Positions 14,083 to 60,272 of a DNA stretch of 64,000 nucleotides are shown in pieces. The translations under genes and the position numbers were made by a program. A model generated the notes under the pieces. It was not told the origin of the DNA and searched no databases. It saw only the letters and a program-made list of their open reading frames with translations. Origin of the DNA: Dimorphilus gyrociliatus. Taxonomy: Eukaryota > Animalia > Annelida. Location of the stretch: NCBI GenBank assembly GCA_904063045.1, contig CAJFCJ010000012.1, positions 744,001 to 808,000 on the forward strand, written 5' to 3'. Within the stretch, counting starts at the first letter, position 1. Every line of letters begins with the position of its first letter.

Positions 14083-15457
14083 ATGGGACAAAATCATTCG
14101 GATATTAACACTCTGATAAGAAGACTTTTAACTCCCGAAAAATTAAAAAAACTGCTGATTCAAGCGATACGAACATCGGATGTTTCAGCAGTCGAAGTAC
14201 TACTGCAGTCAGGTGTTTGTCCTAATTTCCTTAGTGATGAAGGCAAAACACCTCTGCATTACGCAGTTTTTTCGGATGAGGATGGTGAAAAGATTATAGA
14301 ACTATTAATTGATAACGGAGCACAATGTGATATCCCTGATACTAGTCGTTATAAAAGAACCGCACTGTTTGAGGCTATACACTTTAGGTATGTATTTAAT
14401 ATACTCTACATTTACTCTTCTTCCGCTAGTTTCCTTTTATGCAAAAAAAATGTGTCATTGACAAGCATAAAGCAACGAAGCCTGTTATATTGCAGAAAAT
14501 CTAAAGCAGTAGACGCTCTTCTCCGAAAAGGCATATCTACAAAGACTGTATCTCCGTGCCCTTTGGGAATGTCTCCTCTTTTATACGCCTCAAAGTACAG
14601 TACATCCGAAATGGTTTTATGCTTTCTAAAAGCTGGCGCTAATATCCGAAGCTGCTGGATTTGGAAAATAAATAAAGTCATTCCATTAGACATTGTCACC
14701 CACCGAATAGAACAGACTGCGTTGAAAAAAAAGGGAAGGGGCTCACTAATTGTTTTACCTAGGTCAAGATCACCTTCACCTTCCCCTTTGAGAGTGAAAA
14801 ATCGCAGGGCCGCGTCTTCCTCACCGGCAAAACTAAAGAGAAGGCGATTACAGGAAATACGGAACCAATTACAGGAAGAAGCTGAGATTAAGTTTGTGTA
14901 TAATTATTAATTGTAGAGAAATTATATTTATACAGTATATATATTTGTATATTTGATATATTTCTCTGTTTTCTCGAATATTCAGGGAATTCGAATCGGT
15001 TTTTGATCAAGAGCTTTATCTTAATTCAGAGGAGGCGAGTAAAATCTTAAGGTTACTTCTACAGGCCGATGGAAGGCCAGAAATTACTCTCAGGTTATTA
15101 CCAGATGGTGCTACTAGTCGACTTCAAGTTTTAAAACGTCAATTAAATCGTCTATGGTCACAACGTAACCTTGCCACTGATTTTATTATGTCACTAATCT
15201 ATCATGGTTATAGGCCAAACGAAGAGCACTTAATATTTCTTCGTCAGTATGATCAGAATCTGTATTCATCGGTTCGTCAATTTTTGAAAAATCCTTTAAC
15301 CTTGGCCGAACTGGCATCTGTCACAATTCGTAAAAACTGTACCAAAAATGTTATGTATTCTGTAAGCAAATTACTTAAGTATAATGAAAAATTAGCTGCA
15401 GTCGTTGATTTATTATATATGAAAGAGGTTCCATGCACTAATTTAATTAGTTTCTAA
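14083..15457 (+). CDS. Ankyrin repeat and SOCS box (ASB-type) protein, 3 exons
   Basis: Ankyrin repeats (GKTPLHYAV, KRTALFEAI, GMSPLLYAS) and a C-terminal SOCS box (NPLTLAELASVTIRKN). Introns at about 14388-14495 and 14893-14985 keep the frame. Confidence 0.85.
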
Positions 15458-16411: not shown

Positions 16412-16878
16412 TAAATATGAAAGAAGAAAAACAGTGAAAAATGACCACTGAAAGTGATATTTATATATATTTATAATTAGCATTTTTCTTTATTAATAAA
16501 TCTATTTTCTGGTATTTTAATCAAAACAATAGCTCGTTAAGAATATTATAATTAATTTCTTAAATGTAGGTGGCGTGCGTATCTTATTTGATGTTTTTTT
16601 TTTTACATAATAGACTTAAGAAACCTTGAAAACAAAACAAAAGAATTGTAAAAAAGTGAACGAATGATTAGACAAAAAAGACACTTAAAGAAGTTTCAAG
16701 GTCTTTTTATAGTGCTCACTTTAGGTACTGTTGTCAATTCTGGCTCGAACTTTAGTTTGTCTCTTAAATTAGAACTCTAAACTTATTTTACCAGGCTCCT
16801 ACAGTCTAGAATTTACGACAGGTGGCACTCTCCAATAGATTCAAAATTCAATCGATATTGGTACTCCGAAGAAGTGAG

Positions 16879-18990
16879 ATGGAATTTAAAGAATATGCAA
16901 CATGCTTTGTTTTAAGCATTCTTATTGCACTTTTCTTTTCCTTTGCTTTTAAGAAAAGAAATAGAATACCTGGTCCGATGGGCATTCCGCTTCTTGGCCC
17001 TTTGCATAAAATAAGATCAAAAGCTATACACAAAACTTTTGAAAGTTGGAGCACGTATTATGGACCGTTGATAAGTATTAGGTTGTTGGGTAAGAAAATT
17101 ATAATTGTCAGCGGAGCTGATGAAATTAGAACAGTTCTTTCTGGGAAGTCCTTAGATTTTTCGGCAAGACCAGAAATGTTTAGGTTCTCTTTCTTGACCG
17201 ATGGTCATACCGGTATTGCTATGGGACATGTTACTGAAGATTGGCTAAAGAAAAAGAAGAGTGTTGCAAGAGCTTTGAAAATAGATAAGTATGAAGCTGT
17301 TACTAAAACAATTGTCAAAAGACTTTGCGAACTTGGTGAAGATAGGAGTCATTATTGGGATTTAAACAAAGATATTTGCATTGGTCTAATTAATATTATG
17401 ACGTCACTGGTTTTAGGGAAAACTTTTGATTTTCATTCAAAAGACTTATTAGCATATAAATCTGCAATGGAGAGGTCGGCTGAAGCTTCGTTCAGATTAG
17501 AGGGTGTTGTTTTAGATGCTTTTCCGCAATTGATGCATTTTAATTTTCCAAGGCAAATTTGCAAAACGATGAAAGAATGTAGAAATACAGTATCATCATT
17601 TTTAATCAAAGAAATAAATGATGTCATATCAACCTATAAAGAAGGTACATGTCGAGGTCTCGTTGATAGCTTATATGAAGAGTATTTGAAAGGTTAGCTG
17701 GTTTTTATTCTATATAACTTAAGCTAAAAATACAAATAATTTAACAAAGTTCAACTCACAAGATCAATTTTTACTATAAGAAAACTTTATAAATTAGGAT
17801 ATATAACAAAGCAATTATACTTTTAAAAAGTATCTTGTTCTTAAGTTTTATCTCAATGAAGAAGTGAGAATATAAATCTTTAGTTATAGTAATATTGAAA
17901 TTAACTTTTCCTATATATTTCCATAAGATAGTAGATTACATTTAGACATTGAAAAGTAGCGTAGACTATTGAAAAATAAACAAATTTTGATCTGGGTCAG
18001 CACTCGCTAGAGGCCCAGCTGCGATTTTGATTGAAGTACTTACGTTTGTTGTGTTTATTGTTTATTAGAGAATGTAGATTTACCTCATTTTGGTAGTGTT
18101 ACACAAAATTAGTCTTATTTTTTTATAAATTAGAGTTCTAAGGCTTACATAAATATTTATAAACTGTATATATGTGTAAGTAAGCATATAAATATTCATA
18201 TATTTACTTATTTTTACATTCTTCAGATGGTAAAGAGCCTTTGGAAACCTTTGTAAGAACTAGATTATATCCTATATGCTTAGATGTAATATCAGGCGGA
18301 TATATGACAACTGCAAGAGCTTTGCAAGCACTTATTTTACTACTACTACACAATCCTAAAGTTCAGAAGAGTTTACAAGAAGAAGTTGATTCAATGGGAA
18401 GCGACGAGATAGAATTTTCAGACAGAAGATGTATGCCATATACGAATGCTACGTGCCTGGAAATCTTAAGATATATATCTCATATACCTCTTAATTTACC
18501 TCACGTTGCCGTGAGAGAAACGGAACTAGGTGGTGCTACAGTTGAACCTGGAACTCAAGTTTGGACTAACTTTTGGGCAATACATCACAATGAAGATATT
18601 TGGGGAGACCCCTGGACGTTTAGGCCTGAAAGATTTATAGAAGATGGCGTATTGGTTAAGCCTGACCATAAAACAAGAAGGAAGTATGTTTTCATTTATA
18701 TTTTTCTTGTTTGCAAAATAAATCCAATGCCAAACAATACAATACATAAATATTTTCTTTTGTCTTTTTGTAGCTTATTCGTGTTTGGAGCCGGCCGACG
18801 AGTGTGTGTCGGAGAGCAATTGGCCTTAAACAGGCTATTTCTAATAACGGCGTCGTTTTCAAGAAAGTTTACCTTTTACCCAGCCTCCAATTGCAAATTA
18901 CCTTCATCCGATCCAAGAGATTTTGAATTTGGTGCTATATTGAAACCTCCAGATTATTTTGTAAGAGCTGTACCAAGGTCAAAAGAGTAG
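16879..18990 (+). CDS. Cytochrome P450, clan 2-like, 3 exons (16879-17692, 18227-18683, 18774-18990)
   Basis: N-terminal membrane anchor, PGPMGIPLLG hinge, ExxR (EILR), FRPERF, heme motif FGAGRRVCVG; phase-consistent introns. Confidence 0.95.
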
Positions 18991-29000: not shown

Positions 29001-30176
29001 CCACTAGTATTGACAAAACAACTAACAGCACTAAAACAACGATCAGTTCTATTGAGCCTGAAGAATCAACTACAATAAGCGAAAATAGTAGTATTACTGG
29101 TGTTGACGTTAAAACTACATTGAGAACTACCTCAGAAAATAAAGAAACTAGTCGAGAAGAGACGGCAATGACAGACTATTCTAACAAGGATATGCATACG
29201 AAAACCACTAGAGTGAGAACCACTGACAAGACATCTAATCATTCAACTTTTCGGGACTCAAGCTCCTTCACGTCAAAAAAATCGATGACTACAAAGAAGA
29301 ACGTTGAAAATACTACAAGACGTGTGTTTTTTACGAAGAGAGACAATTCCACTTCCTCTACCTCTTATATAACCTCAACGACTTCCGGATGGTTTAGCAT
29401 CAATGAAACAACTTTATCTATTGATTATTCGTCATATTCTACTTCTATAAAGAGTGAGTTTAACTGAGTAATTTTTTAGACCTTTATAAATATTTAATAA
29501 ATTTAATTTAACAGAAAACCCTTGTCATTCCAATCCGTGCACAAATAATGGATCGTGCGAAAATTTGGGCAATAACTCTTTTAAATGCCACTGCGCATCT
29601 TGTTTATGCTTTAAACACGATTTCGGACCCAACTGCGAAAATTCTACAATCAATGAGGCATTTAATTGCTCGACCAAAAGAGATGGTTATTACTCTAGTC
29701 CAAACTCTTGTTCACAGTTTTTTCAATGTAATAAAGGAGTAAGATTAAATATAGATTGTCCCAGGGGACTTGTTTTCAATCCGGAGATTTCTAAATGTGA
29801 TTATATTCAAAATGTTGCTTGTGCATTAGATTCTTTAAAAGAGCTTCAAATTCAAAACAAAACGTATTCGTGCAAGAATAATCCTTGTAAAAGTGGATCT
29901 ACATGTCGAGAAATTGGTCAAATTGGATTTGAGTGCCAATGTTCAGAAAACAAATGTGGCTGTCCAAATTCTGGCAAGCTATGTGATTTTGGATATTCAT
30001 TAGACGATTCTTGTTTAAGTAAAGAGAATTCTTCTGACTCTGTTGATTGTCTACAGCAAATACAATGTATTACAGGGAGATTGCCTCCAAGAGGAGGATG
30101 TTCAATAGATCTTTTTTACGATCATGTTCAAAGAATGTGCGTTCATAATTCATCTGTATCATGTGCTCAAACTTAA
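26059..30176 (+). CDS. Type II membrane SEA-mucin-EGF-chitin-binding (CBM14/peritrophin-A) protein, 6 exons
   Basis: Cytoplasmic N-terminus, RRKKK followed by a TM segment (about 28021-28100), SEA domain (LKITNFNYT...SPGSVIANA), Thr/Ser-rich mucin tract, EGF (NPCHSNPCTNNGSC), CBM14 (CSTKRDGYYSSPNSCSQFFQC...CPRGLVFNPEISKCDY), a second EGF and a degenerate second CBM14. The first exon (26059-about 26212) joins in phase 0 but is less certain. Confidence 0.8.
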
Positions 30177-39190: not shown

Positions 39191-40185
39191 TTATTTACGA
39201 TTACAGAAACAGATTAATCTCTTTAGATCTTGCTTTAGTAGAGAATTTGGTAAGATATATATTAGTGGATTGAATATAGCATTGAGAAGCATTAAAGCAG
39301 AGGATATCGTTCCTATTGGATTTTTATCGTTTTTACCGTAGCCTTTAAATCTGGCTAAAGTAGAGGAAGGTACCCAAAGTATCATAAATATGGCTGAAAT
39401 GAATACAAGTTGAATAAGTAATCTATTTTCTCTCTTTAACTTATTCTTTTTTCCATTTTCACTAACACTCGAAGATTGCTGACTAACTTCTGGTGATGAT
39501 ACTTTCTTCCTCGACGATCTTACTATACAAAATAGTAACATGTAGGCTATAGTTACAAATACGACGGGTAGAATAGTATAAAATATAATAACGAAAATAG
39601 TATATGAGAGATTCTTTGGATAGTCAAACATACAGATATTTTTACCAGGAAAGTATTTTAAATTGCACCATCCAATAGCCCAACCAATAATTGAAGGAAC
39701 GCAGCTAAGTAGCCAAATTGTGAAAATCATTCCTGTTTAAGGAATTTAGTTTCCAACAAGTAAATTTAGTTAATACTATGCTAATTACGTTAATAATAAG
39801 TAATCATACCGTAACAAAATTTCCTTGAGAATAAACTTTTTACTTTACCAGGTTTATAGACTGAAAAAAGTCGGTGGAAAGCAACCAAGCATAAATTTAA
39901 AGCTGATGAATGTAATACACTTGTTACAATCACGGCTAAAACTTTACATATAATTAGGGTAACTTCATACTCGTATGCTTTCATAAAATGCGTTATTGCT
40001 GTTATGATGAAAGCTGTTGTTAGAGCCAGCAGATCAGCCACGTTAACACTTATTACAAAGGCTTTTTGGTCGAAAGTATATTTTCTTTGACGAACGAAAA
40101 TGATGATAAGTAAAATATTAGATATTATTCCATAAATCATTAAAATTAATAGACAAGCAACAACTGGAAAGGAGAGTAAAGCCAT
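39191..40185 (-). CDS. Class A (rhodopsin-like) orphan GPCR, 2 exons
   Basis: Seven hydrophobic segments; TM1 GIISN, TM2 VADLL, TM3 C...FHRL (DRY position), TM4 IW, TM6 LWVP, TM7 NPLIY. Intron at about 39735-39810. Confidence 0.9.
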
Positions 40186-41408: not shown

Positions 41409-41511
41409 TGGCAGCGGTGGGATTCGAACCCACGCCTCCGAAGAGACTGGTGTTTTACTCTAGTTCAACTAGACCTTAAACCAGCGCCTTAGACCGCTCG
41501 GCCACGCTACC
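41409..41511 (-). tRNA. trnL(AAG): tRNA-Leu(AAG) with a 21-nt intron at position 37/38 (41473-41453)
   Basis: The minus strand reads GGTAGCGTGGCCGAGCGGTCTAAGGCGCTGGTTTAAGG[TCTAGTTGAACTAGAGTAAAA]CACCAGTCTCTTCGGAGGCGTGGGTTCGAATCCCACCGCTGCCA. Removing the bracketed segment gives a canonical 82-nt Leu tRNA with intact A/B boxes, a long variable arm and a CTGGT/ACCAG anticodon stem. Confidence 0.95.
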
Positions 41512-44718: not shown

Positions 44719-47700
44719 TTATATTAATAAAATGGCAACAGACTGATGAGATAAATTCCAGAAGGAGTTGTTTTGCTTGTTTTTGTCTATTGGTTGAGAG
44801 TGCGTGAGAATCAATTATGGTTCCTTTTCATTTGGTATGTAATTTGAATTTGATGAAGAAACTTTACCTCTATGAATTAATCTTTTCATTATCGAACCAA
44901 GTAAAAAGTCAAAGATCTCCATAACGCTTATCACTGATCCTCCAAGTAGCAAACCCATAAAGCCACCAACCTCACCTATTATGATTTAAATAAGAGATAA
45001 TTATTCTAAAGTTTTTTCTCAGAACAATTAAAGTAACTTACTAAAGAAATTTCCATAGTTATAGGCCTTTATTTGTTCAACCCTTTCATATTTTAATTGG
45101 GCAAAGAAAACGTCCATTATTAAGAAATTTTTCCTAAGAAATAGAAGTGAAACAATTAGTAATTAAAACAGTTATTTGAGTATTTTACAAAACTTACTGC
45201 ACAAAATTTTCATTTAGCAACATGAGATTCCTGTATGTAGAAAATTCTATTTTTGCTTTTTTTAATGGTACTTCTACATCAATTTTTAGATTTAAGAGTT
45301 GCTCATTAAATTCGACTAAGGCATCATTTAGAGGATTAAGATAAATATCTGCTGTTTCTTCAATGATACTTTTTGCCATATCTTCAGAAAACATCTTTAT
45401 ATTATCAGGTAAAGATAAAGTAGAGTGAAGTTGATAAGGTTCCTTAGCTTCTTCAACGTTTCCAACCAGTCTTAACCAAAAAGTCATATTTTGAAGAGTA
45501 TTCTTCAGAGAAGTTTGTGCTTTTCCTTCAAAATGATCCCACAAGCCAGCTATTTTAGACACGAGGCCTGTGTATCCATTCTTGATTGTTGCGGAAGCTA
45601 AACCAACGTCACTAAAAGTTGATTCACTGAGTCTTGTTTGAATTTTGCTTCTGAAAGATAACAAATCGGCAAGATAAAAGTCTATATCTGTATCAGTAAG
45701 AGTCTCGGATATATTCAATTTTGAAATATTTCCTGATCTATATCCTTCATACAGCATCTTAGTGGTGGTCGCTAGTTTTCCTAACGTTTCCCATTCGTTA
45801 TAAAAATCAAAATTTTCAATAGCAGAAGAAGTGTTCTGTGATCTTTTAGTAGCTTCATCCAATATTTTGACTTTCCAGCTAAAAAGTTCAGTCCATTTGT
45901 TTAGGTATGTATTTAAACAAGTTTTAACTGCATCAAATCCATCTATAAAAATTTGAAAATTCTCAATCTTTTGAGGATCAAAGTATACTGAATGATCTTT
46001 AAGTGAATCTACATCATGGAATACCTATTAAGAGTATTATTATATAATTAAATACAATCAGTGTCTATTGTAGAAATGTAAATATATTTGGATTTACTTA
46101 CCTCTCCTCCTTTTTCATAGTATGAATCTTTAACTTGAGTGCATTTTTTTCTCTCTGCGTCTGTAAGTTCTATCTTTTTTGGTAGATATTCCTTTATCGG
46201 TTGTTTTATAAAAGGAGACGCCCGATTTTCAACGTAATTTCTGTACAAATGTACAGCATCCCTATGTTTATATAGCAACTCATTGGCAGAACTCATTTCT
46301 TCTGGTGAAATTTCGTGTCGTCTATGAGTATCTATAACAATCTGATATATTCTGGATATCACTCCAGCAGTCTCATCGTAAGTTTTCTGAAAGTTTAATT
46401 TTGCAGAATCATAGGCTTGTTTATAATATTTAACAAAATCACTAAAATCATCGAAGACTCTATTAATATCAGCAATAAACTGATCAACCATATATTTTTT
46501 TGCAGAAAGGACCTTTATAAAAATGGATTTTTTGGGATTTTTCGTATTATCTTCAACAAATTTTCGCAATTTACCTAAACCTGTATTTAGATTGTGCAGT
46601 AAATTAAGATTTTTTAGGTATGTCTTTGAATCCACTTTTTGATTTATCTCTCTAGCAGTCTTGTATTTATTATATAGGTCAGTTGTATCCGAATTCAAGA
46701 CTTTCTCTACACTTAAACTTGACAATGATGCATAAGAAAGAGATGGTTCGTAAGCCGATCTTTCACATGGTTCGGAGCAAATACAAGATAAATTCTTTCC
46801 AGCACCAAGTAATTGATCTTCTACGCCTATAATACAATCGAAATAGTTACTGACGTTGCACATTTGCGGTTCATTTTGGGCTGTTGCGGGCATAAACGAA
46901 TCTCTACAGCCGCAAAGTTTTTCCACAGCATCCGTTTCACATTCTCTTTCGCAAGATGAATATGTATATTCTGGATAATATTTCAACGGTTTTGCGCCAC
47001 AATTACCCCATGGGCTTTTTAATCCAGCAGCTTCGCTGAACTTAACTGAAACTAACGAGTGTACTCCTGCTGCTGCTGCAAATCCTAAATCTCTTATAAA
47101 CGGAACATCTCTGTATTTACTAAGAAACACTTTAACTCCGGCGTCACTTTTTGGGCCATTCATGTACTCATACTCTTCTATATTTAAAATTAATGATAAA
47201 CCAGAGCTGGAGCCAGTTTTTGTTGTTGTTAAAACGTCATCTTTTAATGGTGGACTATTAAATGTAAAACAAACACCATAGTCTGTGTGATTTGTAGTAA
47301 AATTTAAATGAGAACAAGCTGTTCCTTCCCATGAACATCTATATATTATGTCGTTTACTTGATGTGCTGATTCTGATCGAAATGTGTCTAACTCCGTTAT
47401 ATTCACTGATTTAAGGAAATAAATTGATTCAAACTATGAAACTATTTCAACTTGGATTAATACAAATTTACTTACACTTATTAACATTGGCCATAATTTC
47501 TTTTCCAAAGAGTTCAGAAGCTTTAACACTTTGATTTAGGAAATGCCCTAGAGTTAAAACAATTCCAGTTTTAACCTGGTGTAGAGCATCTGTTTCTCCG
47601 GAAGATGCTAGGAAAATTATTCCACTTGTGGGTATTTGACTGACTGTTTCTGTAGACGTACTACTAGAACTTGATGTCTTTTTCAAATTTTTGCACTTAT

Positions 47701-50700
47701 CTTCAGGTGGACGTGGAGTTGGATCTTGCTTATCTCCGCTCTCTCCAAATCCACTTTCTTCAGGAACAATAGGTTTTTCATCATCTCCACTTCCACTTCC
47801 ACTTCCAGGAGCAGCTGTTGTTTGAGCTGGTCCACCCCCACTTCCAGGAGCAGCTGTTGTTTGAGCTGGTCCACCCCCACCTCCAGGAGCAATTGTTGTT
47901 TGAGCTGGTCCACCCCCACCTCCAGGAGCAGCTGTTGTTTGAGCTGGTCCACCTCCACCTCCAGGAGCAGCTGTTGTTTGAGCTGGTCCACCCCCACCTC
48001 CAGGAGCAGCTATTGTTTGAGCTGGTCCACCTCCACCTCCAGGAGCAGCTGTTGTTTGAGCTGGTCCACCTCCACCTCCAGGAGCAGCTGTTGTTTGAGC
48101 TGGTCCACCTCCACCTCCAGGAGCAGCTGTTGTTTGAGCTGGTCCACCCCCACCTCCAGGAGCAGCTGTTGTTTGAGCTGGTCCACCTCCACCTCCAGGA
48201 GGTCCTGGGGCTTCTCTCTTACGTCTCTTTGGGGGTGGACCAGGTGGAGTTGGGTGGTCCATGTTTTCTTCTTCGTCTGGATGAGGTGGTTGAGTTGGTG
48301 GTGGACCAATGTTTACACCCTCACCATTATTAACAGTTTTGTAACACTCCGTACAATTATTCTCATCAGATTGGTCAGGGCAGTTATATTCACCATTGCA
48401 CACACTTTCGGTACCTATACAAAGTTTGTCTGTCTCACATATATAATAATTTGTACTTGAACAATAGTTTGTTATATTTGGACAAGTTCCATTTTCAAAA
48501 CTTATTGATTGAAGCATGAATGAAAACTTGTCGTGAGTATATGAGACGGATATTGATAACTTTCCTGTTTCATTCATTTTTTCTGTCAATTGTCCCATAA
48601 TTACCTGCCTGTTTGAAAAGAATGTACTAAATAAGCTATGGGATCAAATAAACAAAAACAGCTTACGTGGTTTCAGAAAACTTTAAAGCTAAATTAGAAG
48701 AGATGTCGATGAGAGAAATAGTTTTATCAGACTTCCAGAAATAAAGATCAGCTTTTAATTTAAACAGCTTAGCATTTAAGGGTAAATATTTTATGATAAA
48801 ACAGCCAATATCCTGAACTAAAACTGAAGGAGAAACTAATGTGAATTTATGTTCATTAGAAGATACTTTTCCGGGTGTTGTTTTCATTGCTGAAATGAAA
48901 TATAAGATGAAATAAATAATACTTATTTCTTCTATACTTAAAATCACTTACGGTATGAATCATACTTTTGCCAACCTGATACTGAATAAAGCCAATAATC
49001 AGGTGCTTTTGATTTATCAATATAGCCGCAGGCCTTAGAATCAGAAAATTGGCACGAGAAAGACGAAAAATCTTTAAGTTCTGGACGATTTTCACATGTT
49101 GTATTTAAGAGACTTATTGACTTTATTCCAATTACACCATAAGGATAATAAAATGAATTCATTTTCAATGGTCTATAACTAATTGTCAGATGTGATGATC
49201 CTTTTAACATATCATAGTATAAAGGTTGAAACTTTTTCGAAAGTAGGGGCCATTCTCGTTGATTTTCTGGGATATTCAATGAAAAAATCTCTCTCTTACT
49301 ATTCTCAAATTGTTGATTGATGCTAAAATATCCATAGACTTCTTCAATAAAGGCAATGTCAATGACAACGCAAACATCATTCGGGAGAACTACATTCGGA
49401 GATGTTATAGATGATAATAGTTGGGCATTTAAATTTGCTTGGAAGTTCAATACAGAGACCCCACCATTATCTAAGAGATAAAATAATGATAGATTTTTAA
49501 AAGGAAAATGATATAAAAATAACATATATCATTACCAGTATATATAGATGAAACATTCCAAAATGCATTCGACTCTGACTCCCTCTGGTAGCCGCATAAA
49601 AATGAAGGATCCTTTGAAAATGTGCACTCAAAAGAAATATCTGAAATATTGTTCTTCTATAAAACCATTTTTAATTGATCAAAGTATACATACTCGCTTG
49701 GCATGAAACTATTTCATCAGAATTGTCAAAGCAATCATTCACACCATTACACAAAGCACTTCTACTGATTTCTTTTCCGTTATCACAAGTATAATTCTGT
49801 GCGTTATAGGAAGCTGCAATGCAAAAATGCAGTTTTCAAATTATTATCATTTTCTTTTAAAATTTTTAACAAACCATTAGCCGGTTTTATATAGTAGTTG
49901 CTTGCTTCTAAGCATTCATCACTCTTAATGCTGACGTCATCAATAGCAATGTCAGATTTCATTTGGAAATTCATTTCTGCTTGAAATATAATTTTGTATG
50001 GCTTTGAAGTTGCTTTAATTCTAATTTGTTTTTTAAGCCATTCGTCGTCTTGTGTACCTTGATACCTCCATAATGTTTTCTTTTCAAATTCACTAAAATA
50101 TTGAATAATGGACAGACTTCCCATTGAGTCAATTTCTGAAAATGTGAATGTGTAGATTGGATATTCTTTTTCTGCTGACTGATCTTTTCTTGTATATTGA
50201 AATAAATAAAAAGTTAAACAGGAAGTTGTATTCCCTTTAGCATAGAAAGGAGTCTCCAAATTTGCTTTTTGGCCTGTTTGTGCCATCGAATTAAATGAAT
50301 CAAAGAGCATGTAATATCCTGCTGTAGAAGATGTCGTATGATCCACCCTTAATTCGTTTGTGCCTATTTTTGTTGTTTTAGTGGCTCCTTTATATCTCTG
50401 CCACATTAATTGTCCCTGTGTCTTTTTAACTGATTTGAAACCGCAGGAACCATCTTTTTCAAAGTCACAATCAATAGAAACATCTGTTTAAGGAAATCTG
50501 ATTAAATATTTTCCAGTTTTGAGTCTCATTTATCATACCGCAATTGTTGATTTCGTCAGAGTTGTCACCGCAATTGTCTACTCCATTACATTTAAGAGTT
50601 GTACTAATACAAACTTTATTATTACAGGTAAACTGGCCTTTATTACATGCTATACGAGTTAAAATGGATATATTTAATATTACGAAAAAGCTACTAACTA

Positions 50701-52458
50701 TATATGTATTTAATACATTATATTACTTACGGCAATAATCTACAATGCAGTTTTCCCATGTTCCATTTAATGATACGTAACACCAAGGTCCAGTTGCCTT
50801 ACTATCAGGATTTCTGCACATGTTTCCGGCACTCTCCAAATCTTTATCAGGGAAAACCAACAAAGAATCTTGTGATTTTTGATATAAATAATAATAAGCT
50901 TTCTTCCACGTCAGGCATGTCTTGCCTGTTTCAGAAATTGTTGTATTGCCTTGATAGTCGGTACCTATAGTACTTGCTTTACAATTCTTCAGAATTCGGT
51001 GGCAAGGTGCTATAGTAACGTCATCAATAGCTATATCTCCCAAGGCTCCTGAACCTATTATTGCTTCAAAGACTATTGAAAAGAGACCGCTTTCTAATCT
51101 AAGGAAACCCCTATTCCAAAGATCAGTAGTTGCTGGTGTAGTTCTACTCCACAATATAGTTTCGTTAGAATCTGGCTTTTTCCTTAGAACTGAAAAAACT
51201 CCAGAGTCTTTTCCAAACATATTATAGTAAAATTCAAGACAAATTTCATCCTCGGCTTGGATAAAGGGAGATGTTAATCTGGCGAACTCTCCCTTATTCC
51301 TATTCGTAGCCTCGATGTAGATATAATTTCCATGTCCGCTGGTGTGATCATTTGGAGGTCCTGTTGAGAGAGTTCCAGTTGGGCCGCTGTTCCTTATCCA
51401 TGGCATTAGAGAATCACTTTGAGAAAAGGAGCATAGATCGTTTTCAAAATCGCATGTAATTGGACGATATTCTGAAAATAAGATATAACATTTTCAAGTA
51501 ATTATTTTCAATGGAAAAACTTTCAAAACTAACGTCCATTGCAACGCTTCCTGACAAACATATTCATAACATTCGTGTCAATTAATTTCGCTTCGGAACT
51601 ACTCTCAGGTGTAATCGATGTAGGATGGCAAGTTTTCGCTACCTTATTATAAGCGACAGCGTTACAAGTATTATCTAGAAAGTTTAAACAGATTTGTTCA
51701 CAAACTGCCTCTGTAACACCTGAGAAATTCTGATAGAAAAATTCTAAACCAGACATGAATTTATTCTGATATTTTACAAGACTATCCGAACACTGGTCAA
51801 GGCTTCTTACAGTAGAAGAACTTTTATCCGTTGCAGAGAATTTTTTATTAACTTTATCATACAATCCCATTTCATATGTTGCAGTTGTCCTATAATAGTT
51901 TTTAATTAATTAATTTCTATTATTATTACAATTATTATAAATTTATATATTTAAATTTAAGTAAATAGTCTCTTCACTTTTTACCTAAAGAAGTTTTGAT
52001 TGCATATTGTTACAGATGGAAACTGTAAATTATTCGAATAGACTATATCCATATTCACAGATTTCGGGTGTGTATTTAAGTGACTACTTCTTGTAACCAC
52101 AATCCAAGTAAATCCTCCAAATGCACTCAACACAATTACAAGCCATATTAACTTCTTAAAGATGGTTCCTTTCCCCGTAATGTTCTTAACTCCATGGAAA
52201 GTTGTATCTTGTGTAAAGTCTACTATCTTTTCTTTAAATGAAGGTTTAGGTTTATCATACGGTGGAGGAAGGGGTGTTGTTTCGGGCTCTAATAAATGAC
52301 GAAGTTATGAAAAATAAAGAACAAGTTATCTTTTGAAAACACTTACTGGCTATTTCTGGTTTTTCTTTCTCTAGTTTTTCCATTGACTTGACATTGATAA
52401 CTCTAGATCGAGCTGAAGTACGTCCACTTGAAGGACGGGGAGATGAGAACATCTCCAT
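44719..52458 (-). CDS. Giant DEG/ENaC (ASIC/ENaC superfamily) channel subunit with inserted PAN, 4xMAM, kringle and 3xLDLa modules, 16 exons
   Basis: Pre-TM1 FTQDTTFHG, TM1, FPSVTICNQNFFR, palm/thumb core (CSWEG, DYGVCFTFN, GLSLILNIE, SPWGNC, YTYSSCERECETDAVEKLCGC, CSEPCERSAYEPSLS), beta11-12 (NFLIMDVFFAQLKYERVEQIKAY) and TM2 EVGGFMGLLLGGSVISVMEIFD. All exons join in phase by canonical GT-AG. The last exon is the least certain. Confidence 0.92.
47805..48194 (-). repeat. Coding minisatellite, 10 x 39 bp, encoding (GGGGGPAQTTAAP)10
   Basis: ccaggagc recurs every 39 nt from 47805 to 48156 with few substitutions (TIAAP, TTIAP, GSGGG variants). Confidence 0.98.
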
Positions 52459-53809: not shown

Positions 53810-55241
53810 ATGGAAATATCAACTTACTACTCTACACTCACCACTGGACAACCAGAGGAAGGATGGAGAAAGAGGCTTAGAACAGCCTATCAAATTCTTA
53901 TTCCTATTACTCTTGCTTTTATTATGTTGGCTATGGGATGCGATATTCAACCGAAAGTTGTTATTAAAACATTAAAAAGGCCTTTAGCCCCAATTATTGG
54001 AGCATCATGCCAGTTTATTTTGCTACCGCTAGTAGCTTTTGGAATGGGTAAAGCATTTAATTACGAAACTGAAATTGGTGTTGGGATGCTGATTGTTGCT
54101 TGTTGCCCAGGTGGTGCAGTTTCAAATATTTTCTGCTATTGGACAAGAGGTATATAATTTAAATGTTGTGCATCCTTCTCCTAATTTCTGGTCAAGGATT
54201 ATCAAATGTTATCAATTCGGTTTATCTATATGTACTGTATTGAATATTTTGTAACAAGAGAAAATTTTATATATTCCTTACGTTGTATAGCTTTGTAATC
54301 TAACTCGACGAATAATTTGTTCCACTTAAGCATTGATAAGCTAATCATTTTTTAGAAAAGGTTAATTAAATTGGAGCATTTACTGAGAAAATGTATTTTT
54401 TTTTATCTTGCAGGTAACCTTACTCTGTCTGTAACTATGACCAGCATTTCAACAGTATTAGCTTTCGGATTTATGCCTCTTAATTTATTCATATATACTA
54501 GAGGTTTCAATAGCCGAAATGTAAAAGTTCCCTATTTGGAAATATTTCTTGGTTTAGTCCTAACTCTAGTACCATTAACGATAGGAGGATTCATAAAGCG
54601 ATTCTTTCCAAAAGCTGCAGGGGTTTTTATTAGAATAGGATCTTTTGCGGGTATTGCGATGATTATTATGGCGGGAATTATGCAAAGGTTTATATATTCA
54701 AACAATGCAAAAAGAAAAGATTCTTGGAAAATTATACTTGGAGCTGCAATATTACCGCTATTAGGATTTTTTTTGGGTATGTATATAGATTTAGAAAGGC
54801 TCTTTTCTCTTTGATCTCTTCACTCTTATCGTTTACAAATAATATGTTTGTTTTATTAATTAAGGATTTGGAATTTCCAGTTTAGCATTTAAATGGCTAA
54901 AAATGCCTGAAAGGAGAACAATAGCTTTTGAAACAAGTTGTCAAAATGTTGGATTGGCTTTGACTTTAGTTTCTTTTGCATTTAAAGGCACCAGAGATCA
55001 AATTGGTGCTTACACTCAATTCCCACTATTTTTCTCCCTATTTATGATGGTTGAAGCAATTGGTCTTTGTATTTTTATTAAAGGTTATCAAATTTATAAA
55101 GATAAAAAGAGAGTAGTACACGAAAGTCCGCAAAAAGACAATTTAGATCAGAATGATCATGGAAAAATACCAGAGCTCACAGAATCTGAAAATGGTGTAA
55201 TAATTAATAAAGCATTTATGGATAGTTTTCATAAACTGTAA
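53810..55241 (+). CDS. SLC10-family sodium/bile-acid-type cotransporter, 3 exons
   Basis: IMLAMGC, QFILLPL, CCPGGAVSN, GNLTLSVTMT, RRTIAFETSCQN are SLC10/BASS hallmarks. Confidence 0.92.
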
Positions 55242-58925: not shown

Positions 58926-60272
58926 ATGGATGTAACTCAGCTACAAGCACAGTTCAGTGATACATTAACAAAAACCAGTTTATCAATAGGTAATAGTATT
59001 AATCTTTTCTCCCTTTTCAAACTATATCAAACCATATAGTAAAGTATTACTCTTATTATTATAGGCTTAATTCTGGGTGTGAAAATGAAAATTTTTGATA
59101 CAATCCTTGCGCTGGATTCACCTTCGACCTCGTCTGAAATAGCTAACAAATGCTCTTTGAAAGAGAGGTTTGGTTTAAATAGAATATAAGGAAAGTTTTA
59201 TAAAAGCTTCTATTGCTTCTTATAAGATATGTCAGAGAATGGTTAGGATTGATGTCAACTTCCGGTATTATTTCGGTCGATGGTACATCCGAATCTGATA
59301 AATTTTATGCCAGTGACGCGCTAGAAACGGCACTGAAGGAAAGCGGAAGAACATTAGGAATTTTGGAGAATTTGTTAGCGCTTCTTCCCCATTTGCCTGA
59401 ACTTGAAAAGTGCTTTCAATTAGATGGACCGAGAGGTTAAACAATGACACCACTTTTACTTAAAGATTATTACTATTATTAAAAATCATAACAATAATAA
59501 AATATTATTGGCAGGTATTCCTCACGAAAGATTTACAGAAATATATAGACTATTTGACCTGAATTCGTCACGGAAATTTACCTCGACCTTCCTCCAAGAA
59601 TTTATTGGTCACGTTCCAGACGTCATAAGTCGTTTGAGTAGGGCTAACTTTCAAGTTGCGCGATTTCAATTTATGTGTAACCAATATATTCCTTACCTGT
59701 AAATTTTAGGTCAAGGTGGTGATGTTCTTGAAATTGGCTGCAACAGTGGCTTCTCAACTGTCGCTCTCGCAAAAATGTTCAAAAAATCAAAATTCTACGG
59801 CCAAGACATTTGCAAGGAAGGCATATTGAGTGCTAAACTTCTTTCACGTGACATGGAGAATGTTAACTTTTCTATTCAGGACGCCTGCAAAAGAACTGGG
59901 TTTGATGAGGAGTCCTTTGATTGGATTTTAGCAATGGATGTTATACATGATTTACCATATCCCGATGCGGCTATAAAAGAGTTATATAGGATACTAAAAA
60001 AAGATGGTATTTTGTCGATAGTTGACATAAATGCTCATAGTAGACCTTCACAAAATTTAAATAATCCAAGAGCTACCTTTTTGTATGCTATATCTTTATG
60101 TCACTGTACACCAATGTCATTTGGTCTACCTGACAGTATGGGACTAGGTGCAACGTGGGGTAAAGAAAGAGCTAAAGATTTGTTTGAGGAATGCGGATTC
60201 CGTCTGGAATCGGTGCAAGATATGGAGAGTGATAAACTTCAAAGTCACTACGTATTTAAGAAACTATTATAG
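58926..60272 (+). CDS. Class I SAM-dependent methyltransferase with N-terminal winged helix (Rv2258c-like), 5 exons
   Basis: SSEIANKCSLKERYVREWL, SAM motif VLEIGCNSG, FDWILAMDVIHDLPYP, YAISLCHCTPMS, GLGATWG. A possible extra upstream exon (58469-58585) joins in phase 0 but is unproven. Confidence 0.9.

What the first reader, a model, noticed from the sequence alone, without database searches (positions are those of the whole stretch)
44719..52458. Giant receptor-channel chimera: a DEG/ENaC with a PAN-MAM-kringle-LDLa cassette inserted in its finger domain
Seen: one continuous, phase-consistent reading frame runs from the DEG/ENaC N-terminus (HG motif, TM1, FPSVTICNQNFFR) through PAN/apple (about 51770-51540), MAM (51470-51000), kringle (50985-50730, CRNPD...GPWCY), LDLa (50650-50545), MAM (50465-49905), LDLa (49790-49700), two divergent MAMs (49640-48480), LDLa (48470-48355) and a Pro/Gly/Thr linker, then back into the palm/thumb core and TM2. 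About 1,200 aa are inserted where typical subunits of 500-700 aa have a short finger. Established: the finger is the variable ligand-sensing region of this family (peptide site in FaNaC, protease-released inhibitory tracts in ENaC), and PAN/kringle/MAM/LDLa are protein-binding modules of plasminogen/HGF-type and adhesion or uptake receptors. Inference: an ion channel gated by a large extracellular ligand, a protease cascade or a matrix tether. I know of no characterised channel with this architecture, but I cannot search databases.
Basis: partly seen in the sequence, partly recalled or inferred. Interest (0 to 1): 0.95.

Follow-up and report, generated by a model that had tools for sequence, protein, structure and literature searches.

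The report
Giant sodium channel with receptor antenna
This is a real, expressed gene for a 2,238-residue DEG/ENaC-type sodium-channel subunit that carries a string of about nine protein-binding modules inside its sensor ("finger") region; the same design exists as unnamed proteins in an annelid and an orthonectid, I found no study of it, and what opens the channel is unknown.

Summary
On the minus strand, 15 exons (52458-44815) joined by 14 GT-AG introns of 53-95 nt give one 6,717-nt reading frame. Spliced transcript contigs of the same organism skip introns 1-11 exactly. One contig runs from the 5'UTR through TM1 and the whole cassette into exon 10; a second runs from exon 10 into the channel core. 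Only a 39-nt tandem repeat inside exon 10 is unbridged.

A related species has every exon in the same order, without stops, and dN is far below a saturated dS. Capitella teleta (two paralogues) and Intoshia linei have collinear proteins annotated as hypothetical. All belong to a DEL-10-like clade that also has a ~450-aa helical domain at the knuckle.

So the gene is neither a nested gene nor an assembly artefact, but it is not unique either. Seven literature searches found no description. The gating ideas (macromolecule, tether, protease) remain inference. A polybasic furin-type site is conserved only in the close relative. The fourth "MAM" is unproven. Unchecked first-stage notes report similar giant channels on other pieces of this genome.

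The parts
44815..52458 (-). Whole coding region: 15 exons, 6,717 nt, 2,238 aa, ATG at 52458, stop at 44815-44817
   Evidence: Model built. Introns 1-11 confirmed by spliced transcript contigs. Introns 12-14 rest on GTAAGT donors, frame and the relative's orthologous exons.
52347..52458 (-). Exon 1: start codon and cytoplasmic N-terminus; in-frame stop two codons upstream
   Evidence: Transcript joint 52288/52347. By arithmetic on contig length, the transcript contig extends about 65 nt 5' of the ATG.
51985..52288 (-). Exon 2: DEG/ENaC N-terminal part with HG motif (H69 G70), TM1 (~aa 83-102) and post-TM1 motif FPSVTICNQNFFR (aa 127-139)
   Evidence: Pfam ASC 64.7 bits, profile 1-78. Aligns to ASIC5 residues 28-117 and chicken ASIC1 19-100.
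51534..51889 (-). Exon 3: PAN/apple domain (model aa ~175-248)
   Evidence: Pfam PAN_1 28.0 bits, E 2e-6. 76% identical in the relative, dN 0.15.
50731..51471 (-). Exon 4: MAM1 (aa 263-411) plus kringle (aa ~426-504, six Cys)
   Evidence: Pfam MAM 119.1 bits and Kringle 54.8 bits. Orthologous ORF P0003 is 76% identical.
50539..50649 (-). Exon 5: LDLa1 (six Cys, DxSDE calcium cage); phase 1-1 exon
   Evidence: Pfam Ldl_recept_a 40.4 bits. Joints.
49875..50483 (-). Exon 6: MAM2 (aa 546-727); phase 1-1 exon
   Evidence: Pfam MAM 91.9 bits. hhalign control gives 99.6% probability.
49694..49813 (-). Exon 7: LDLa2, a 4-Cys variant with the calcium cage kept; phase 1-1 exon
   Evidence: Pfam Ldl_recept_a 33.5 bits, profile 6-37. 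Sequence.
48952..49640 (-). Exons 8-9 (49640-49536 and 49470-48952): MAM3-like beta-sandwich (aa ~786-948), divergent, followed by the start of the MAM4-like region
   Evidence: No Pfam hit. ESM Atlas nearest clusters are MAM, score 0.94 with 179 shared features. hhalign end-to-end to a MAM profile, E 0.004. 51% identical in the relative.
48667..48889 (-). Exon 10: middle of the MAM4-like region (aa ~955-1110, which spans exons 9-11); fold not established
   Evidence: Only the N-terminal CxF..CGY motif matches MAM. The Atlas is uninformative. Conserved without stops in the relative, 56% identity.
47476..48608 (-). Exon 11: end of the MAM4-like region, LDLa3 (aa 1116-1152), Pro-rich stretch, polybasic site, Gly/Pro/Thr repeats, Ser/Thr-rich stretch, last finger helices
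   Evidence: Continuous 391-aa ORF. Pfam Ldl_recept_a 27.8-31.2 bits. Spliced at both ends in transcripts.
48215..48229 (-). Polybasic furin-type motif K-R-R-K-R (aa 1194-1198), the only R-x-[KR]-R in the protein
   Evidence: Regex scan. The relative has KKRRKKR at the same place (L004 tail). Absent at this place in the Capitella and Intoshia proteins.
47792..48201 (-). 39-nt x 10.5 tandem repeat encoding 13-aa Gly/Pro/Ala/Thr units (mucin-like linker); both transcript contigs end inside it
   Evidence: TRF score 743, 96% matches. Contig ends at 47828 and 48172.
46102..47405 (-). Exon 12: channel core (end of finger, beta-ball, palm, Cys-rich thumb; aa 1445-~1680), then the first ~200 aa of the helical knuckle domain
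   Evidence: Pfam ASC 168.6 bits. Aligns to human ASIC2 160-390 and chicken ASIC1 158-389. Core 90% identical in the relative, dN 0.065.
45198..46024 (-). Exon 13: remainder of the ~450-aa helical knuckle domain
   Evidence: No Pfam hit. Thumb-to-TM2 distance is 530 aa against 68-84 in canonical relatives. The homologous region of a Pecten relative folds as long helices at pLDDT >90.
45042..45133 (-). Exon 14: last palm strands before TM2
   Evidence: 87% identical in the relative. Frame and GTAAGT donors.
44815..44975 (-). Exon 15: pre-TM2 GG, TM2 with G-G-S filter (aa 2197-2199) and conserved E/D, short cytoplasmic tail, stop
   Evidence: Sequence. 85% identical in the relative. Family-wide near-invariant G..GL..G.S..E columns.

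Best explanation
One gene encodes a 2,238-aa subunit of a DEG/ENaC (amiloride-sensitive-type) cation channel. It belongs to the DEL-10-like clade, whose members carry a ~450-aa helical domain at the knuckle.

In addition, about 1,300 aa are inserted in the finger, between the conserved post-TM1 palm strand and the last finger helices. In order these are: PAN, MAM, kringle, LDLa, MAM, a 4-Cys LDLa, one probable and one possible MAM-like module, LDLa, a polybasic furin-type site, a ~140-aa Gly/Pro/Thr repeat linker and a Ser/Thr-rich stretch. The modules lie on phase-1 exons, as expected for exon shuffling.

Shown here: single spliced mRNA, extracellular topology, conservation under purifying selection, intact channel hallmarks, and homologous architecture in Capitella and Intoshia.

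Inferred: the subunit forms a trimeric Na+-permeable pore. The finger is where ENaC, ASIC and FaNaC receive their extracellular cues, and here it carries a built-in antenna that binds extracellular macromolecules (matrix, mucus or another cell surface). Occupancy of, or pull on, this antenna then sets channel activity. Furin-type cleavage would leave the antenna attached only to the strand that runs into TM1.

My odds: about 0.93 that the architecture is one gene product, and about 0.35 that the antenna directly controls gating.
For: Gene model: 15 exons, 14 short GT-AG introns, no stop.

Transcripts of the same organism (0 mismatches): a 3,701-nt contig skips introns 1-10 exactly, and a 2,684-nt contig skips intron 11.

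Relative B's RNA contigs are spliced at the same places: they skip 53 nt at 49640/49694, and at 47382/47580 they replace 197 nt with 127 nt, i.e. the 70-nt intron is absent.

The relative's genomic contigs L004 and L001 hold every exon in order without stops. dN is 0.07-0.45 while dS is above 1.4 or saturated.

Domains: Pfam.

Finger location: PDB alignments.

Channel hallmarks are present: HG, FPxVTxCN, thumb cysteines, a G-G-S filter and the TM2 Glu.

Homologous architecture: the model is collinear with Capitella P0061/P0157 and Intoshia P0009. The four cassette proteins group together in a quick tree, SH-aLRT 92.

Introns 3-9 are all phase 1 (computed).

The polybasic site is conserved in the close relative. 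An Owenia relative has a LamG-like module plus a Thr/Pro linker before its core.
Against: No functional data of any kind exist for this gene.

The two transcript contigs do not overlap; they are joined only through the genomic ORF across the repeat. Their depths differ (139 versus 374), so shorter 3' transcripts or isoforms cannot be excluded.

Skipping model exons 3-10 (PAN to MAM4-like) would keep the frame, since introns 2 and 10 are both phase 2. Contigs drop rare variants, so such an isoform would not have been seen.

The furin-type site is absent at this position in Capitella and Intoshia. There is only one such site, unlike the paired sites of ENaC.

The long flexible linker argues against rigid coupling through the C-terminal side of the antenna.

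The C. elegans channels with extra modules (EGAS-1 to -4) and DEL-10 gave no currents in oocytes (PMC10424705), so heterologous tests may be hard.

Introns 12-14 were not covered by the laid reads.
Confidence: 0.75

Rival explanations
1. The antenna only positions or clusters the channel, for example by anchoring it in an apical matrix or mediating MAM-MAM oligomerisation. Gating is by something conventional for the ASIC/BASIC/DEL-10 side of the family, such as protons, divalent cations, small ligands, or a constitutive leak.
For: The core is most similar to ASIC2, ASIC1 and ASIC5/BASIC. DEL-10 sits with ASIC/BASIC/TadNaC in clade A (PMC9822975). A ~240-aa flexible, probably glycosylated linker separates the modules from the finger helices. 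From general knowledge, MAM domains are known oligomerisation and adhesion modules.
Against: The N-terminal end of the cassette is only ~35 residues from the palm strand that runs into TM1. The insertion point is the family's variable sensor domain. The same insertion point is reused in Capitella, Intoshia and Owenia.
Confidence: 0.3
2. This is an ENaC-like protease-controlled channel. Furin-type cleavage at KRRKR, and possibly further cuts by extracellular proteases recruited by the PAN, kringle and LDLa modules, relieves auto-inhibition by the cassette.
For: There is a single R-R-K-R motif in the finger, conserved as KKRRKKR in the close relative although the linker around it has diverged. 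ENaC alpha and gamma are activated by cleavage in the finger (PMC9540061, PMC9163703). PAN plus kringle is the plasminogen/HGF module pair.
Against: There is only one site, whereas ENaC needs two flanking an inhibitory tract. There is no such motif at this place in Capitella or Intoshia. By my reading of the sequence, the kringle has Lys where the second acidic residue of the lysine-binding site would be, so plasminogen-like binding is doubtful.
Confidence: 0.2
3. This is a non-conducting receptor or adhesion protein that merely uses the DEG/ENaC trimer as a scaffold.
For: Related module-bearing or giant C. elegans members (EGAS-1 to -4, DEL-10) gave no current in oocytes (PMC10424705).
Against: The pore-lining and gating motifs are intact (HG, G-G-S, TM2 Glu/Asp, small residue at the degenerin position). 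They are the most conserved parts between the two species: core 90%, TM1 exon 86%, TM2 exon 85%.
Confidence: 0.1
4. This is an artefact: two genes (a nested MAM/LDLa gene inside a channel gene), routinely skipped exons, or a chimeric assembly.
For: The two transcript contigs are not physically joined across the repeat, and their depths differ.
Against: A single transcript contig runs from the 5'UTR and TM1 exon through all cassette exons. Exon 11 is an uninterrupted ORF spliced on both sides. The order is the same in an independent species' genomic contigs. Capitella and Intoshia proteins are collinear over both halves.
Confidence: 0.03

Closest known systems
Hypothetical proteins CAPTEDRAFT_202568 (ELU13130.1, 1,980 aa) and CAPTEDRAFT_202570 (1,933 aa) of Capitella teleta, and A3Q56_01374 (OAF70867.1, 2,120 aa) of Intoshia linei
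   Same: All have the ASC N-terminus, then MAM, kringle, LDLa, MAM and further modules, then the ASC core with the giant knuckle and TM2. They are collinear with the model over aa 44-729 and 1444-2211 at ~26% identity. They group with the model in the tree.
   Different: Capitella has a CUB domain where this gene has the MAM3-like module. Neither Capitella nor Intoshia has a polybasic site before the core, and their linkers are shorter or different. None is named or studied.
DEL-10-like DEG/ENaC clade: C. elegans DEL-10 (Q10025) and ~850-1,060-aa proteins of molluscs, nemerteans and annelids, some auto-named 'degenerin-like protein del-10'
   Same: They share a ~450-aa helical domain between thumb and TM2, with a thumb-to-TM2 distance of 523-561 aa. 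The AF2 model of the Pecten member has pLDDT 89.6, and its best Swiss-Prot structural match over the whole length is DEL-10.
   Different: These members have a normal finger: 87-94 aa between the two landmarks, against 1,361 here. The stimulus of DEL-10 is unknown (PMC9822975).
ENaC alpha/gamma subunits
   Same: Same superfamily and fold. There is a furin-type site within the finger, and beta-ENaC has a G-G-S filter (from memory).
   Different: ENaC has two cleavage sites that release a short inhibitory tract and carries no modular domains. The core here is closer to ASIC/BASIC than to ENaC: E 1e-34 to 1e-24 against 1e-19.
MEC-4/MEC-10 touch channel with extracellular partners MEC-1, MEC-5 and MEC-9
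   Same: The concept of a DEG/ENaC coupled to extracellular-matrix proteins made of adhesion modules (general knowledge).
   Different: There the matrix proteins are separate gene products, whereas here the modules are part of the subunit. No evidence for mechanosensitivity was obtained.
[quoted passage not shown]
   Same: A precedent for DEG/ENaC subunits that carry extra extracellular modules (PMC10424705).
   Different: The modules are different (EGF), the proteins are much smaller, and the placement was not compared here. No currents were recorded in oocytes.
MAM/LDLa array proteins (MALRD1-type; enteropeptidase) and PAN-kringle proteins (plasminogen, HGF)
   Same: The cassette's nearest non-channel sequence relatives are 'MAM and LDL-receptor class A domain-containing protein 1' of Lytechinus and Aplysia. 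The Atlas structure neighbours of the top MAM hit include enteropeptidase.
   Different: Those are secreted or single-pass proteins without a pore. Here there is one kringle, which probably lacks a full lysine-binding site.

Membership tests
DEG/ENaC (Pfam ASC, PF00858) | Profile match above the curated cut-off | tested here: met
   64.7 bits (profile 1-78) and 168.6 bits (profile 136-414), against a cut-off of 23.6.
DEG/ENaC (Pfam ASC, PF00858) | Two transmembrane helices, HG motif before TM1, post-TM1 FPxVTxCN strand | tested here: met
   H69-G70, hydrophobic stretch at aa 83-102, FPSVTICN at aa 127, TM2 at aa ~2187-2213. Alignment to ASIC5 and ASIC1.
DEG/ENaC (Pfam ASC, PF00858) | Cys-rich thumb, palm and beta-ball alignable to solved structures | tested here: met
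   phmmer to ASIC2 E 8e-34 and ASIC1 E 6e-29, with conserved cysteines aligned.
DEG/ENaC (Pfam ASC, PF00858) | G/S-x-S selectivity filter and acidic residues in TM2 | tested here: met
   G-G-S at aa 2197-2199, followed by the ME-IFD stretch. Near-invariant columns in the family alignment.
DEG/ENaC (Pfam ASC, PF00858) | Trimeric, amiloride-sensitive cation current | not testable with these tools
   Needs electrophysiology.
DEL-10-like giant-knuckle clade | ~450-aa helical domain between thumb and the last palm strands | tested here: met
   Thumb-to-TM2 distance is 530 aa, against 523-561 in clade members and 68-84 in canonical members. Homologous over aa 1444-2227 with Intoshia and Capitella. 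Helical at pLDDT >90 in the Pecten model.
MAM domain (PF00629) | Profile match and conserved Cys pattern | tested here: met
   MAM1 119.1 bits and MAM2 91.9 bits.
MAM domain (PF00629) | Third and fourth copies (aa 786-948 and 955-1110) | tested here: inconclusive
   Third copy: Atlas score 0.94 to MAM clusters and hhalign full-length E 0.004, but no Pfam hit. Fourth copy: N-terminal motif only.
Kringle (PF00051) | Profile match, six cysteines, NPD..GPWC core | tested here: met
   54.8 bits against a cut-off of 34.3. Six Cys and CRNPD...GPWCY are present.
Kringle (PF00051) | Lysine-binding site with two acidic residues (plasminogen type) | tested here: not met
   The sequence reads NPD-S-K, with Lys at the second acidic position. 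The positions are assigned from memory of plasminogen kringles, not from an alignment made here.
PAN/apple (PF00024) | Profile match | tested here: met
   28.0 bits against a cut-off of 21.4, E 2e-6.
LDL-receptor class A (PF00057) | Profile match, six Cys, acidic calcium cage | tested here: met
   40.4, 33.5 and 27.8 bits. All three keep the D-x-S-D-E cage. The second copy has four Cys.
ENaC-type proteolytic activation | Two furin or other protease sites in the finger flanking an inhibitory tract | tested here: not met
   There is only one R-x-[KR]-R motif in the whole protein (aa 1195-1198). It is conserved in the close relative but not in Capitella or Intoshia.
Tethered mechanosensory DEG/ENaC (MEC-4 type) | Force-dependent gating through extracellular links | not testable with these tools
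   Only the presence of adhesion-type modules is shown.

The most novel reading that the evidence does not exclude
A self-contained receptor-channel. In this reading, a DEG/ENaC pore is opened or closed directly by the binding of, or traction from, a large extracellular protein or matrix component. The component is captured by the subunit's own PAN-MAM-kringle-LDLa antenna. This would be a gating modality not known for the superfamily, conserved from annelids to orthonectids and expanded into several paralogues in this genome.
Probability: 0.3. Interest if true: 0.85.

Novelty: new variant of a known kind. Interest (0 to 1): 0.66.

Why it matters
DEG/ENaC channels are gated by protons, peptides, proteases or force, and the finger is where these cues act. 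How external links reach the gate in the mechanosensory members is still debated.

Here the candidate external link is written into the subunit itself, it is expressed, and it is conserved in at least three lineages. That gives a direct experimental handle: compare full-length, cassette-deleted, furin-site and degenerin-site constructs, and use the isolated cassette as bait for ligands.

The result also shows that the 'DEL-10-like' clade, which has a large confidently folded helical domain on top of the channel, is widespread in Spiralia. I found no study of that clade either.

Tried and rejected
1. Nested gene or exon skipping: rejected by the spliced contigs.
2. Assembly chimera: rejected by the relative's contigs and the distant collinear homologues.
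3. Other copies in the window: none found by tblastn of the model against the window.
4. A search for full-length relatives with the word-based tool was blocked by its length filter. The exhaustive HMMER search found them. A follow-up with the Capitella protein found only its paralogue and MALRD1-type proteins, so the true taxonomic spread is not settled.
5. Pfam at E up to 10 on the MAM3-like, MAM4-like and knuckle pieces: nothing useful.
6. Atlas on the MAM4 piece and a knuckle piece: uninformative.
7. Foldseek of the Pecten model against the PDB: only the ASIC, ASIC5 (BASIC) and FaNaC channel part matched, with no fold name for the knuckle domain.
8. dN/dS ratios could not be computed for most exons because dS is saturated. 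Only 'dN far below dS' is claimed.
9. The careful tree did not finish, so only the quick tree is reported.
10. Species identity: not established. It is not Dimorphilus gyrociliatus, whose proteins are in the library at only 33-35% identity, and not Intoshia linei (35%).
11. Literature: seven searches found no paper linking DEG/ENaC with MAM, kringle, PAN or LDLa modules.

Full report
**Observation**

The window is AT-rich (about 29% G+C). Between 52458 and 44815 the minus strand holds a run of long stop-free segments in alternating frames. I enumerated frame-compatible GT..AG pairs.

The result is one model of 15 exons and 14 introns. The introns are 58, 95, 62, 81, 55, 61, 53, 65, 62, 58, 70, 77, 64 and 66 nt, most with GTAAGT-like donors. 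The coding sequence is 6,717 nt and encodes 2,238 aa without an internal stop. The ATG at 52458 follows an in-frame stop two codons upstream.

Pfam finds, all above the curated cut-offs:
- ASC on the N-terminal exon (profile positions 1-78) and on the core exon (136-414)
- PAN_1
- MAM and kringle on one exon
- Ldl_recept_a
- a second MAM
- a second Ldl_recept_a
- a third Ldl_recept_a at the start of the large exon, which also holds a 39-nt x 10.5 tandem repeat (47792-48201)

**Is it one transcript?**

No run labelled as RNA from this organism is served. However, run X1 (type not recorded) holds 78% of the sampled words. When laid on 46450-52400 it proved to be a spliced transcriptome of the same organism, with no mismatches.

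- A 3,701-nt contig runs from inside exon 11 (48172) to beyond 52347. It skips 58, 62, 65, 53, 61, 55, 81, 62, 95 and 58 nt at exactly my introns 10 to 1, with CT..AC ends on the plus strand (GT..AG on the gene strand).
- Summing exon lengths reproduces the contig length. This places its 5' end about 65 nt upstream of the ATG.
- A 2,684-nt contig runs from 47828 across intron 11 (70 nt) into the core and about 1.4 kb further.
- Both contigs end inside the tandem repeat, as short-read assemblies do. The gap (47828-48172) lies inside a single uninterrupted genomic ORF.

So the TM1 exon is spliced to the whole cassette, and the cassette's last exon is spliced to the channel core.

Two caveats apply. 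The contigs do not overlap, and their depths differ (139 against 374). This could be 3' bias or additional shorter transcripts. Also, introns 2 and 10 share phase 2, so skipping model exons 3-10 (PAN to MAM4-like) would stay in frame. No such joint was listed, but contigs drop rare forms.

RNA contigs of a related organism (X3/X4, 80-90% alike) are spliced at the same places. They skip 53 nt at 49640/49694. At 47382/47580 they replace 197 nt with 127 nt, which means the 70-nt intron is absent.

**Conservation**

ORFs 76% identical to the core and to the MAM-kringle exon occur on Logan contigs of another species. One contig (L004) carries, in order and on one strand, ASC N-terminus, PAN, MAM+kringle, MAM and further ORFs. 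A second (L001) carries the linker end, core, knuckle and TM2.

Every exon has an orthologue without stops. Amino-acid identity is:

| Part | Identity (%) |
|---|---|
| TM1 exon | 86 |
| PAN | 76 |
| MAM1 | 77 |
| kringle | 69 |
| LDLa1 | 78 |
| MAM2 | 69 |
| LDLa2 | 58 |
| MAM3-like | 51 |
| MAM4-like | 56 |
| LDLa3 | 63 |
| core | 90 |
| knuckle | 60 |
| TM2 exon | 85 |

dN is 0.07-0.45, while dS is above 1.4 or saturated. The cassette is therefore under purifying selection, less strict than on the pore.

An SBF-family gene lies upstream of the channel gene's 5' end on the opposite strand in both species.

**Wider relatives**

An exhaustive HMMER search with the core returned two very long proteins among the best hits: Intoshia linei OAF70867.1 (2,120 aa) and Capitella teleta ELU13130.1 (1,980 aa). 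Both are annotated as hypothetical.

- Pfam finds MAM, kringle and LDLa (plus CUB in Capitella) between the two ASC parts.
- BLASTP shows collinearity with my model over aa 44-729 and 1444-2211.
- Capitella has a 67%-identical paralogue on the same contig.

Most other close hits are 850-1,060 aa proteins of molluscs (Pecten, Ostrea, Patella, Octopus, Bulinus), nemerteans (Lineus, Tubulanus) and annelids (Owenia, Dimorphilus). Some are auto-named 'degenerin-like protein del-10'.

Landmark motifs show that these proteins have a normal finger, with 87-94 aa between the two landmarks against 1,361 here. They also have 523-561 aa between thumb and TM2, against 68-84 in canonical members and 530 here.

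In a quick ML tree the four cassette-bearing proteins form one group inside this clade, with SH-aLRT 92. This is not bootstrap support, and the careful search did not finish.

An Owenia neighbour has a truncated gene model. It begins with a LamG-like module and a Thr/Pro-rich linker just before its core. This suggests that module insertion at this point is recurrent.

**Where the insertions sit**

The N-terminal exon aligns to ASIC5 up to residue 117 and to chicken ASIC1 up to about 100. The core exon resumes at chicken ASIC1 about 158 and ASIC2 160. Homology stops at about 389-390, where the knuckle helices begin.

The cassette therefore replaces most of the finger's N-terminal part. The roughly 45 residues before the core exon are the likely remaining finger helices. 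The second insertion is at the knuckle.

An AlphaFold2 model of the Pecten member, built from a 53-sequence alignment, is confident (mean pLDDT 89.6). It shows the knuckle domain as a set of long helices, one of them 84 residues. Its channel part matches solved ASIC structures. Its best whole-length Swiss-Prot match is C. elegans DEL-10. No named fold was found for the helical domain.

**Details that bear on mechanism**

- *Topology.* The whole cassette is extracellular, as fits disulfide-rich modules.
- *LDLa modules.* All three keep the acidic calcium cage. The second has only four cysteines, and I read the missing two as the first and third.
- *Kringle.* It has its six cysteines, but by my reading of the motif (assigned from memory) it has Lys at the second acidic position of the lysine-binding site.
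- *Polybasic site.* The only R-x-[KR]-R motif is KRRKR at aa 1194-1198, just before the repeat linker. The close relative has KKRRKKR there although the linker repeats differ. Capitella and Intoshia have none at that place.
- *Intron phase.* Introns 3-9 are all phase 1, the classical signature of exon shuffling.
- *Pore.* H-G, FPSVTICN, the thumb cysteines, G-G-S and the TM2 acidic residues are present, and they lie in the most conserved exons.

**How it most likely works**

Shown: one mRNA, one protein, a channel-competent core, an extracellular modular antenna in the sensor domain, and conservation.

Inferred: the subunit forms a trimeric Na+-permeable channel whose activity depends on what the antenna binds or is attached to. 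A furin-type cut would leave the antenna hanging from the strand that continues into TM1.

I give the antenna-gating idea about 0.35. The rivals are an antenna that is only an anchor (0.3), ENaC-like protease control (0.2) and a non-conducting scaffold (0.1). These overlap in part.

**Comparison with what is known, and novelty**

The protein is a member of DEG/ENaC by every sequence criterion tested, and of the DEL-10-like clade. DEL-10's stimulus is unknown (PMC9822975). DEL-10 and the module-bearing EGAS channels gave no current in oocytes (PMC10424705).

ENaC offers the analogy of cleavage in the finger (PMC9540061, PMC9163703). MEC-4 offers the analogy of extracellular links.

Seven full-text searches found no paper describing a DEG/ENaC with MAM, kringle, PAN or LDLa modules. 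The Dimorphilus genome paper only notes that ENaCs are expanded in annelids (PMC7854359).

The architecture is thus a new variant of a known kind. It is present but unnamed in public databases since the Capitella and Intoshia genome annotations.

Unchecked first-stage notes report at least four further giant paralogues and several giant-knuckle channels on other pieces of this genome. Two partly matching X1 contigs, at 46930-46968 and 51209-51245, are compatible with expressed paralogues.

**Verdict**

The functional reading is open. Interest is moderately high rather than exceptional, because homologues already exist in databases, a precedent for module-bearing subunits exists, and no function is shown.

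Noticed in passing
window 45198-46720 (minus strand): Second giant insertion in the same protein: a ~450-aa helical domain at the knuckle. More than 30 spiralian proteins share it, and by structure so does C. elegans DEL-10. The AF2 model of a Pecten member is very confident (pLDDT 89.6) and contains helices up to 84 residues. No named fold was found.
   Followed up: partly
window 47792-48201: A 39-nt x 10.5 tandem repeat (96% matches) encodes Gly/Pro/Ala/Thr 13-mers. Both transcript contigs break inside it. In the related species the repeat units are different, although the polybasic motif just upstream is kept.
   Followed up: partly
window 46450-47828 versus 48172-52400: The 3' transcript contig has 2.7 times the k-mer depth of the 5' contig (374 against 139). 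This could be 3' bias or additional shorter transcripts. Skipping model exons 3-10 (PAN to MAM4-like) would stay in frame.
   Followed up: no
window 46930-46968 and 51209-51245: Two further X1 contigs match only ~38 nt and then diverge on both sides. They are possibly transcripts of paralogous giant channels, as noted by the scan on other pieces of this genome.
   Followed up: no
P0006/P0154 (Owenia fusiformis): A relative next to the cassette group starts, in a truncated gene model without TM1, with a LamG/ConA-like module and a Thr/Pro-rich mucin-like linker just before the ASC core. This suggests a different module at the same insertion point.
   Followed up: partly
window 54371-54814 (+) and L004 1657-2121: An SBF (sodium/bile-acid symporter family) gene lies upstream of the channel gene's 5' end on the opposite strand, both here and in the related species, so local synteny is conserved.
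   Followed up: partly
window 14083-14910, 16822-18990, 29565-30176, 39191-39730, 59775-60272: Other gene fragments in the window by Pfam: ankyrin repeats, a cytochrome P450 in two ORFs, a chitin-binding peritrophin-A domain, a rhodopsin-type GPCR and a methyltransferase.
   Followed up: no
window 41409-41511: A first-stage note reports an intron-bearing tRNA-Leu(AAG) here. ARAGORN as run by the tool found no tRNA anywhere in the window. The tool's settings may not allow introns, so this is not a refutation.
   Followed up: partly
run X2 (invertebrate metagenome RNA, 2024), window 48324-48474: A 151-nt contig identical to exon 11 (LDLa3) is present in an 'invertebrate metagenome' RNA library, so the organism or its RNA occurs in a mixed sample. 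The species was not identified.
   Followed up: no
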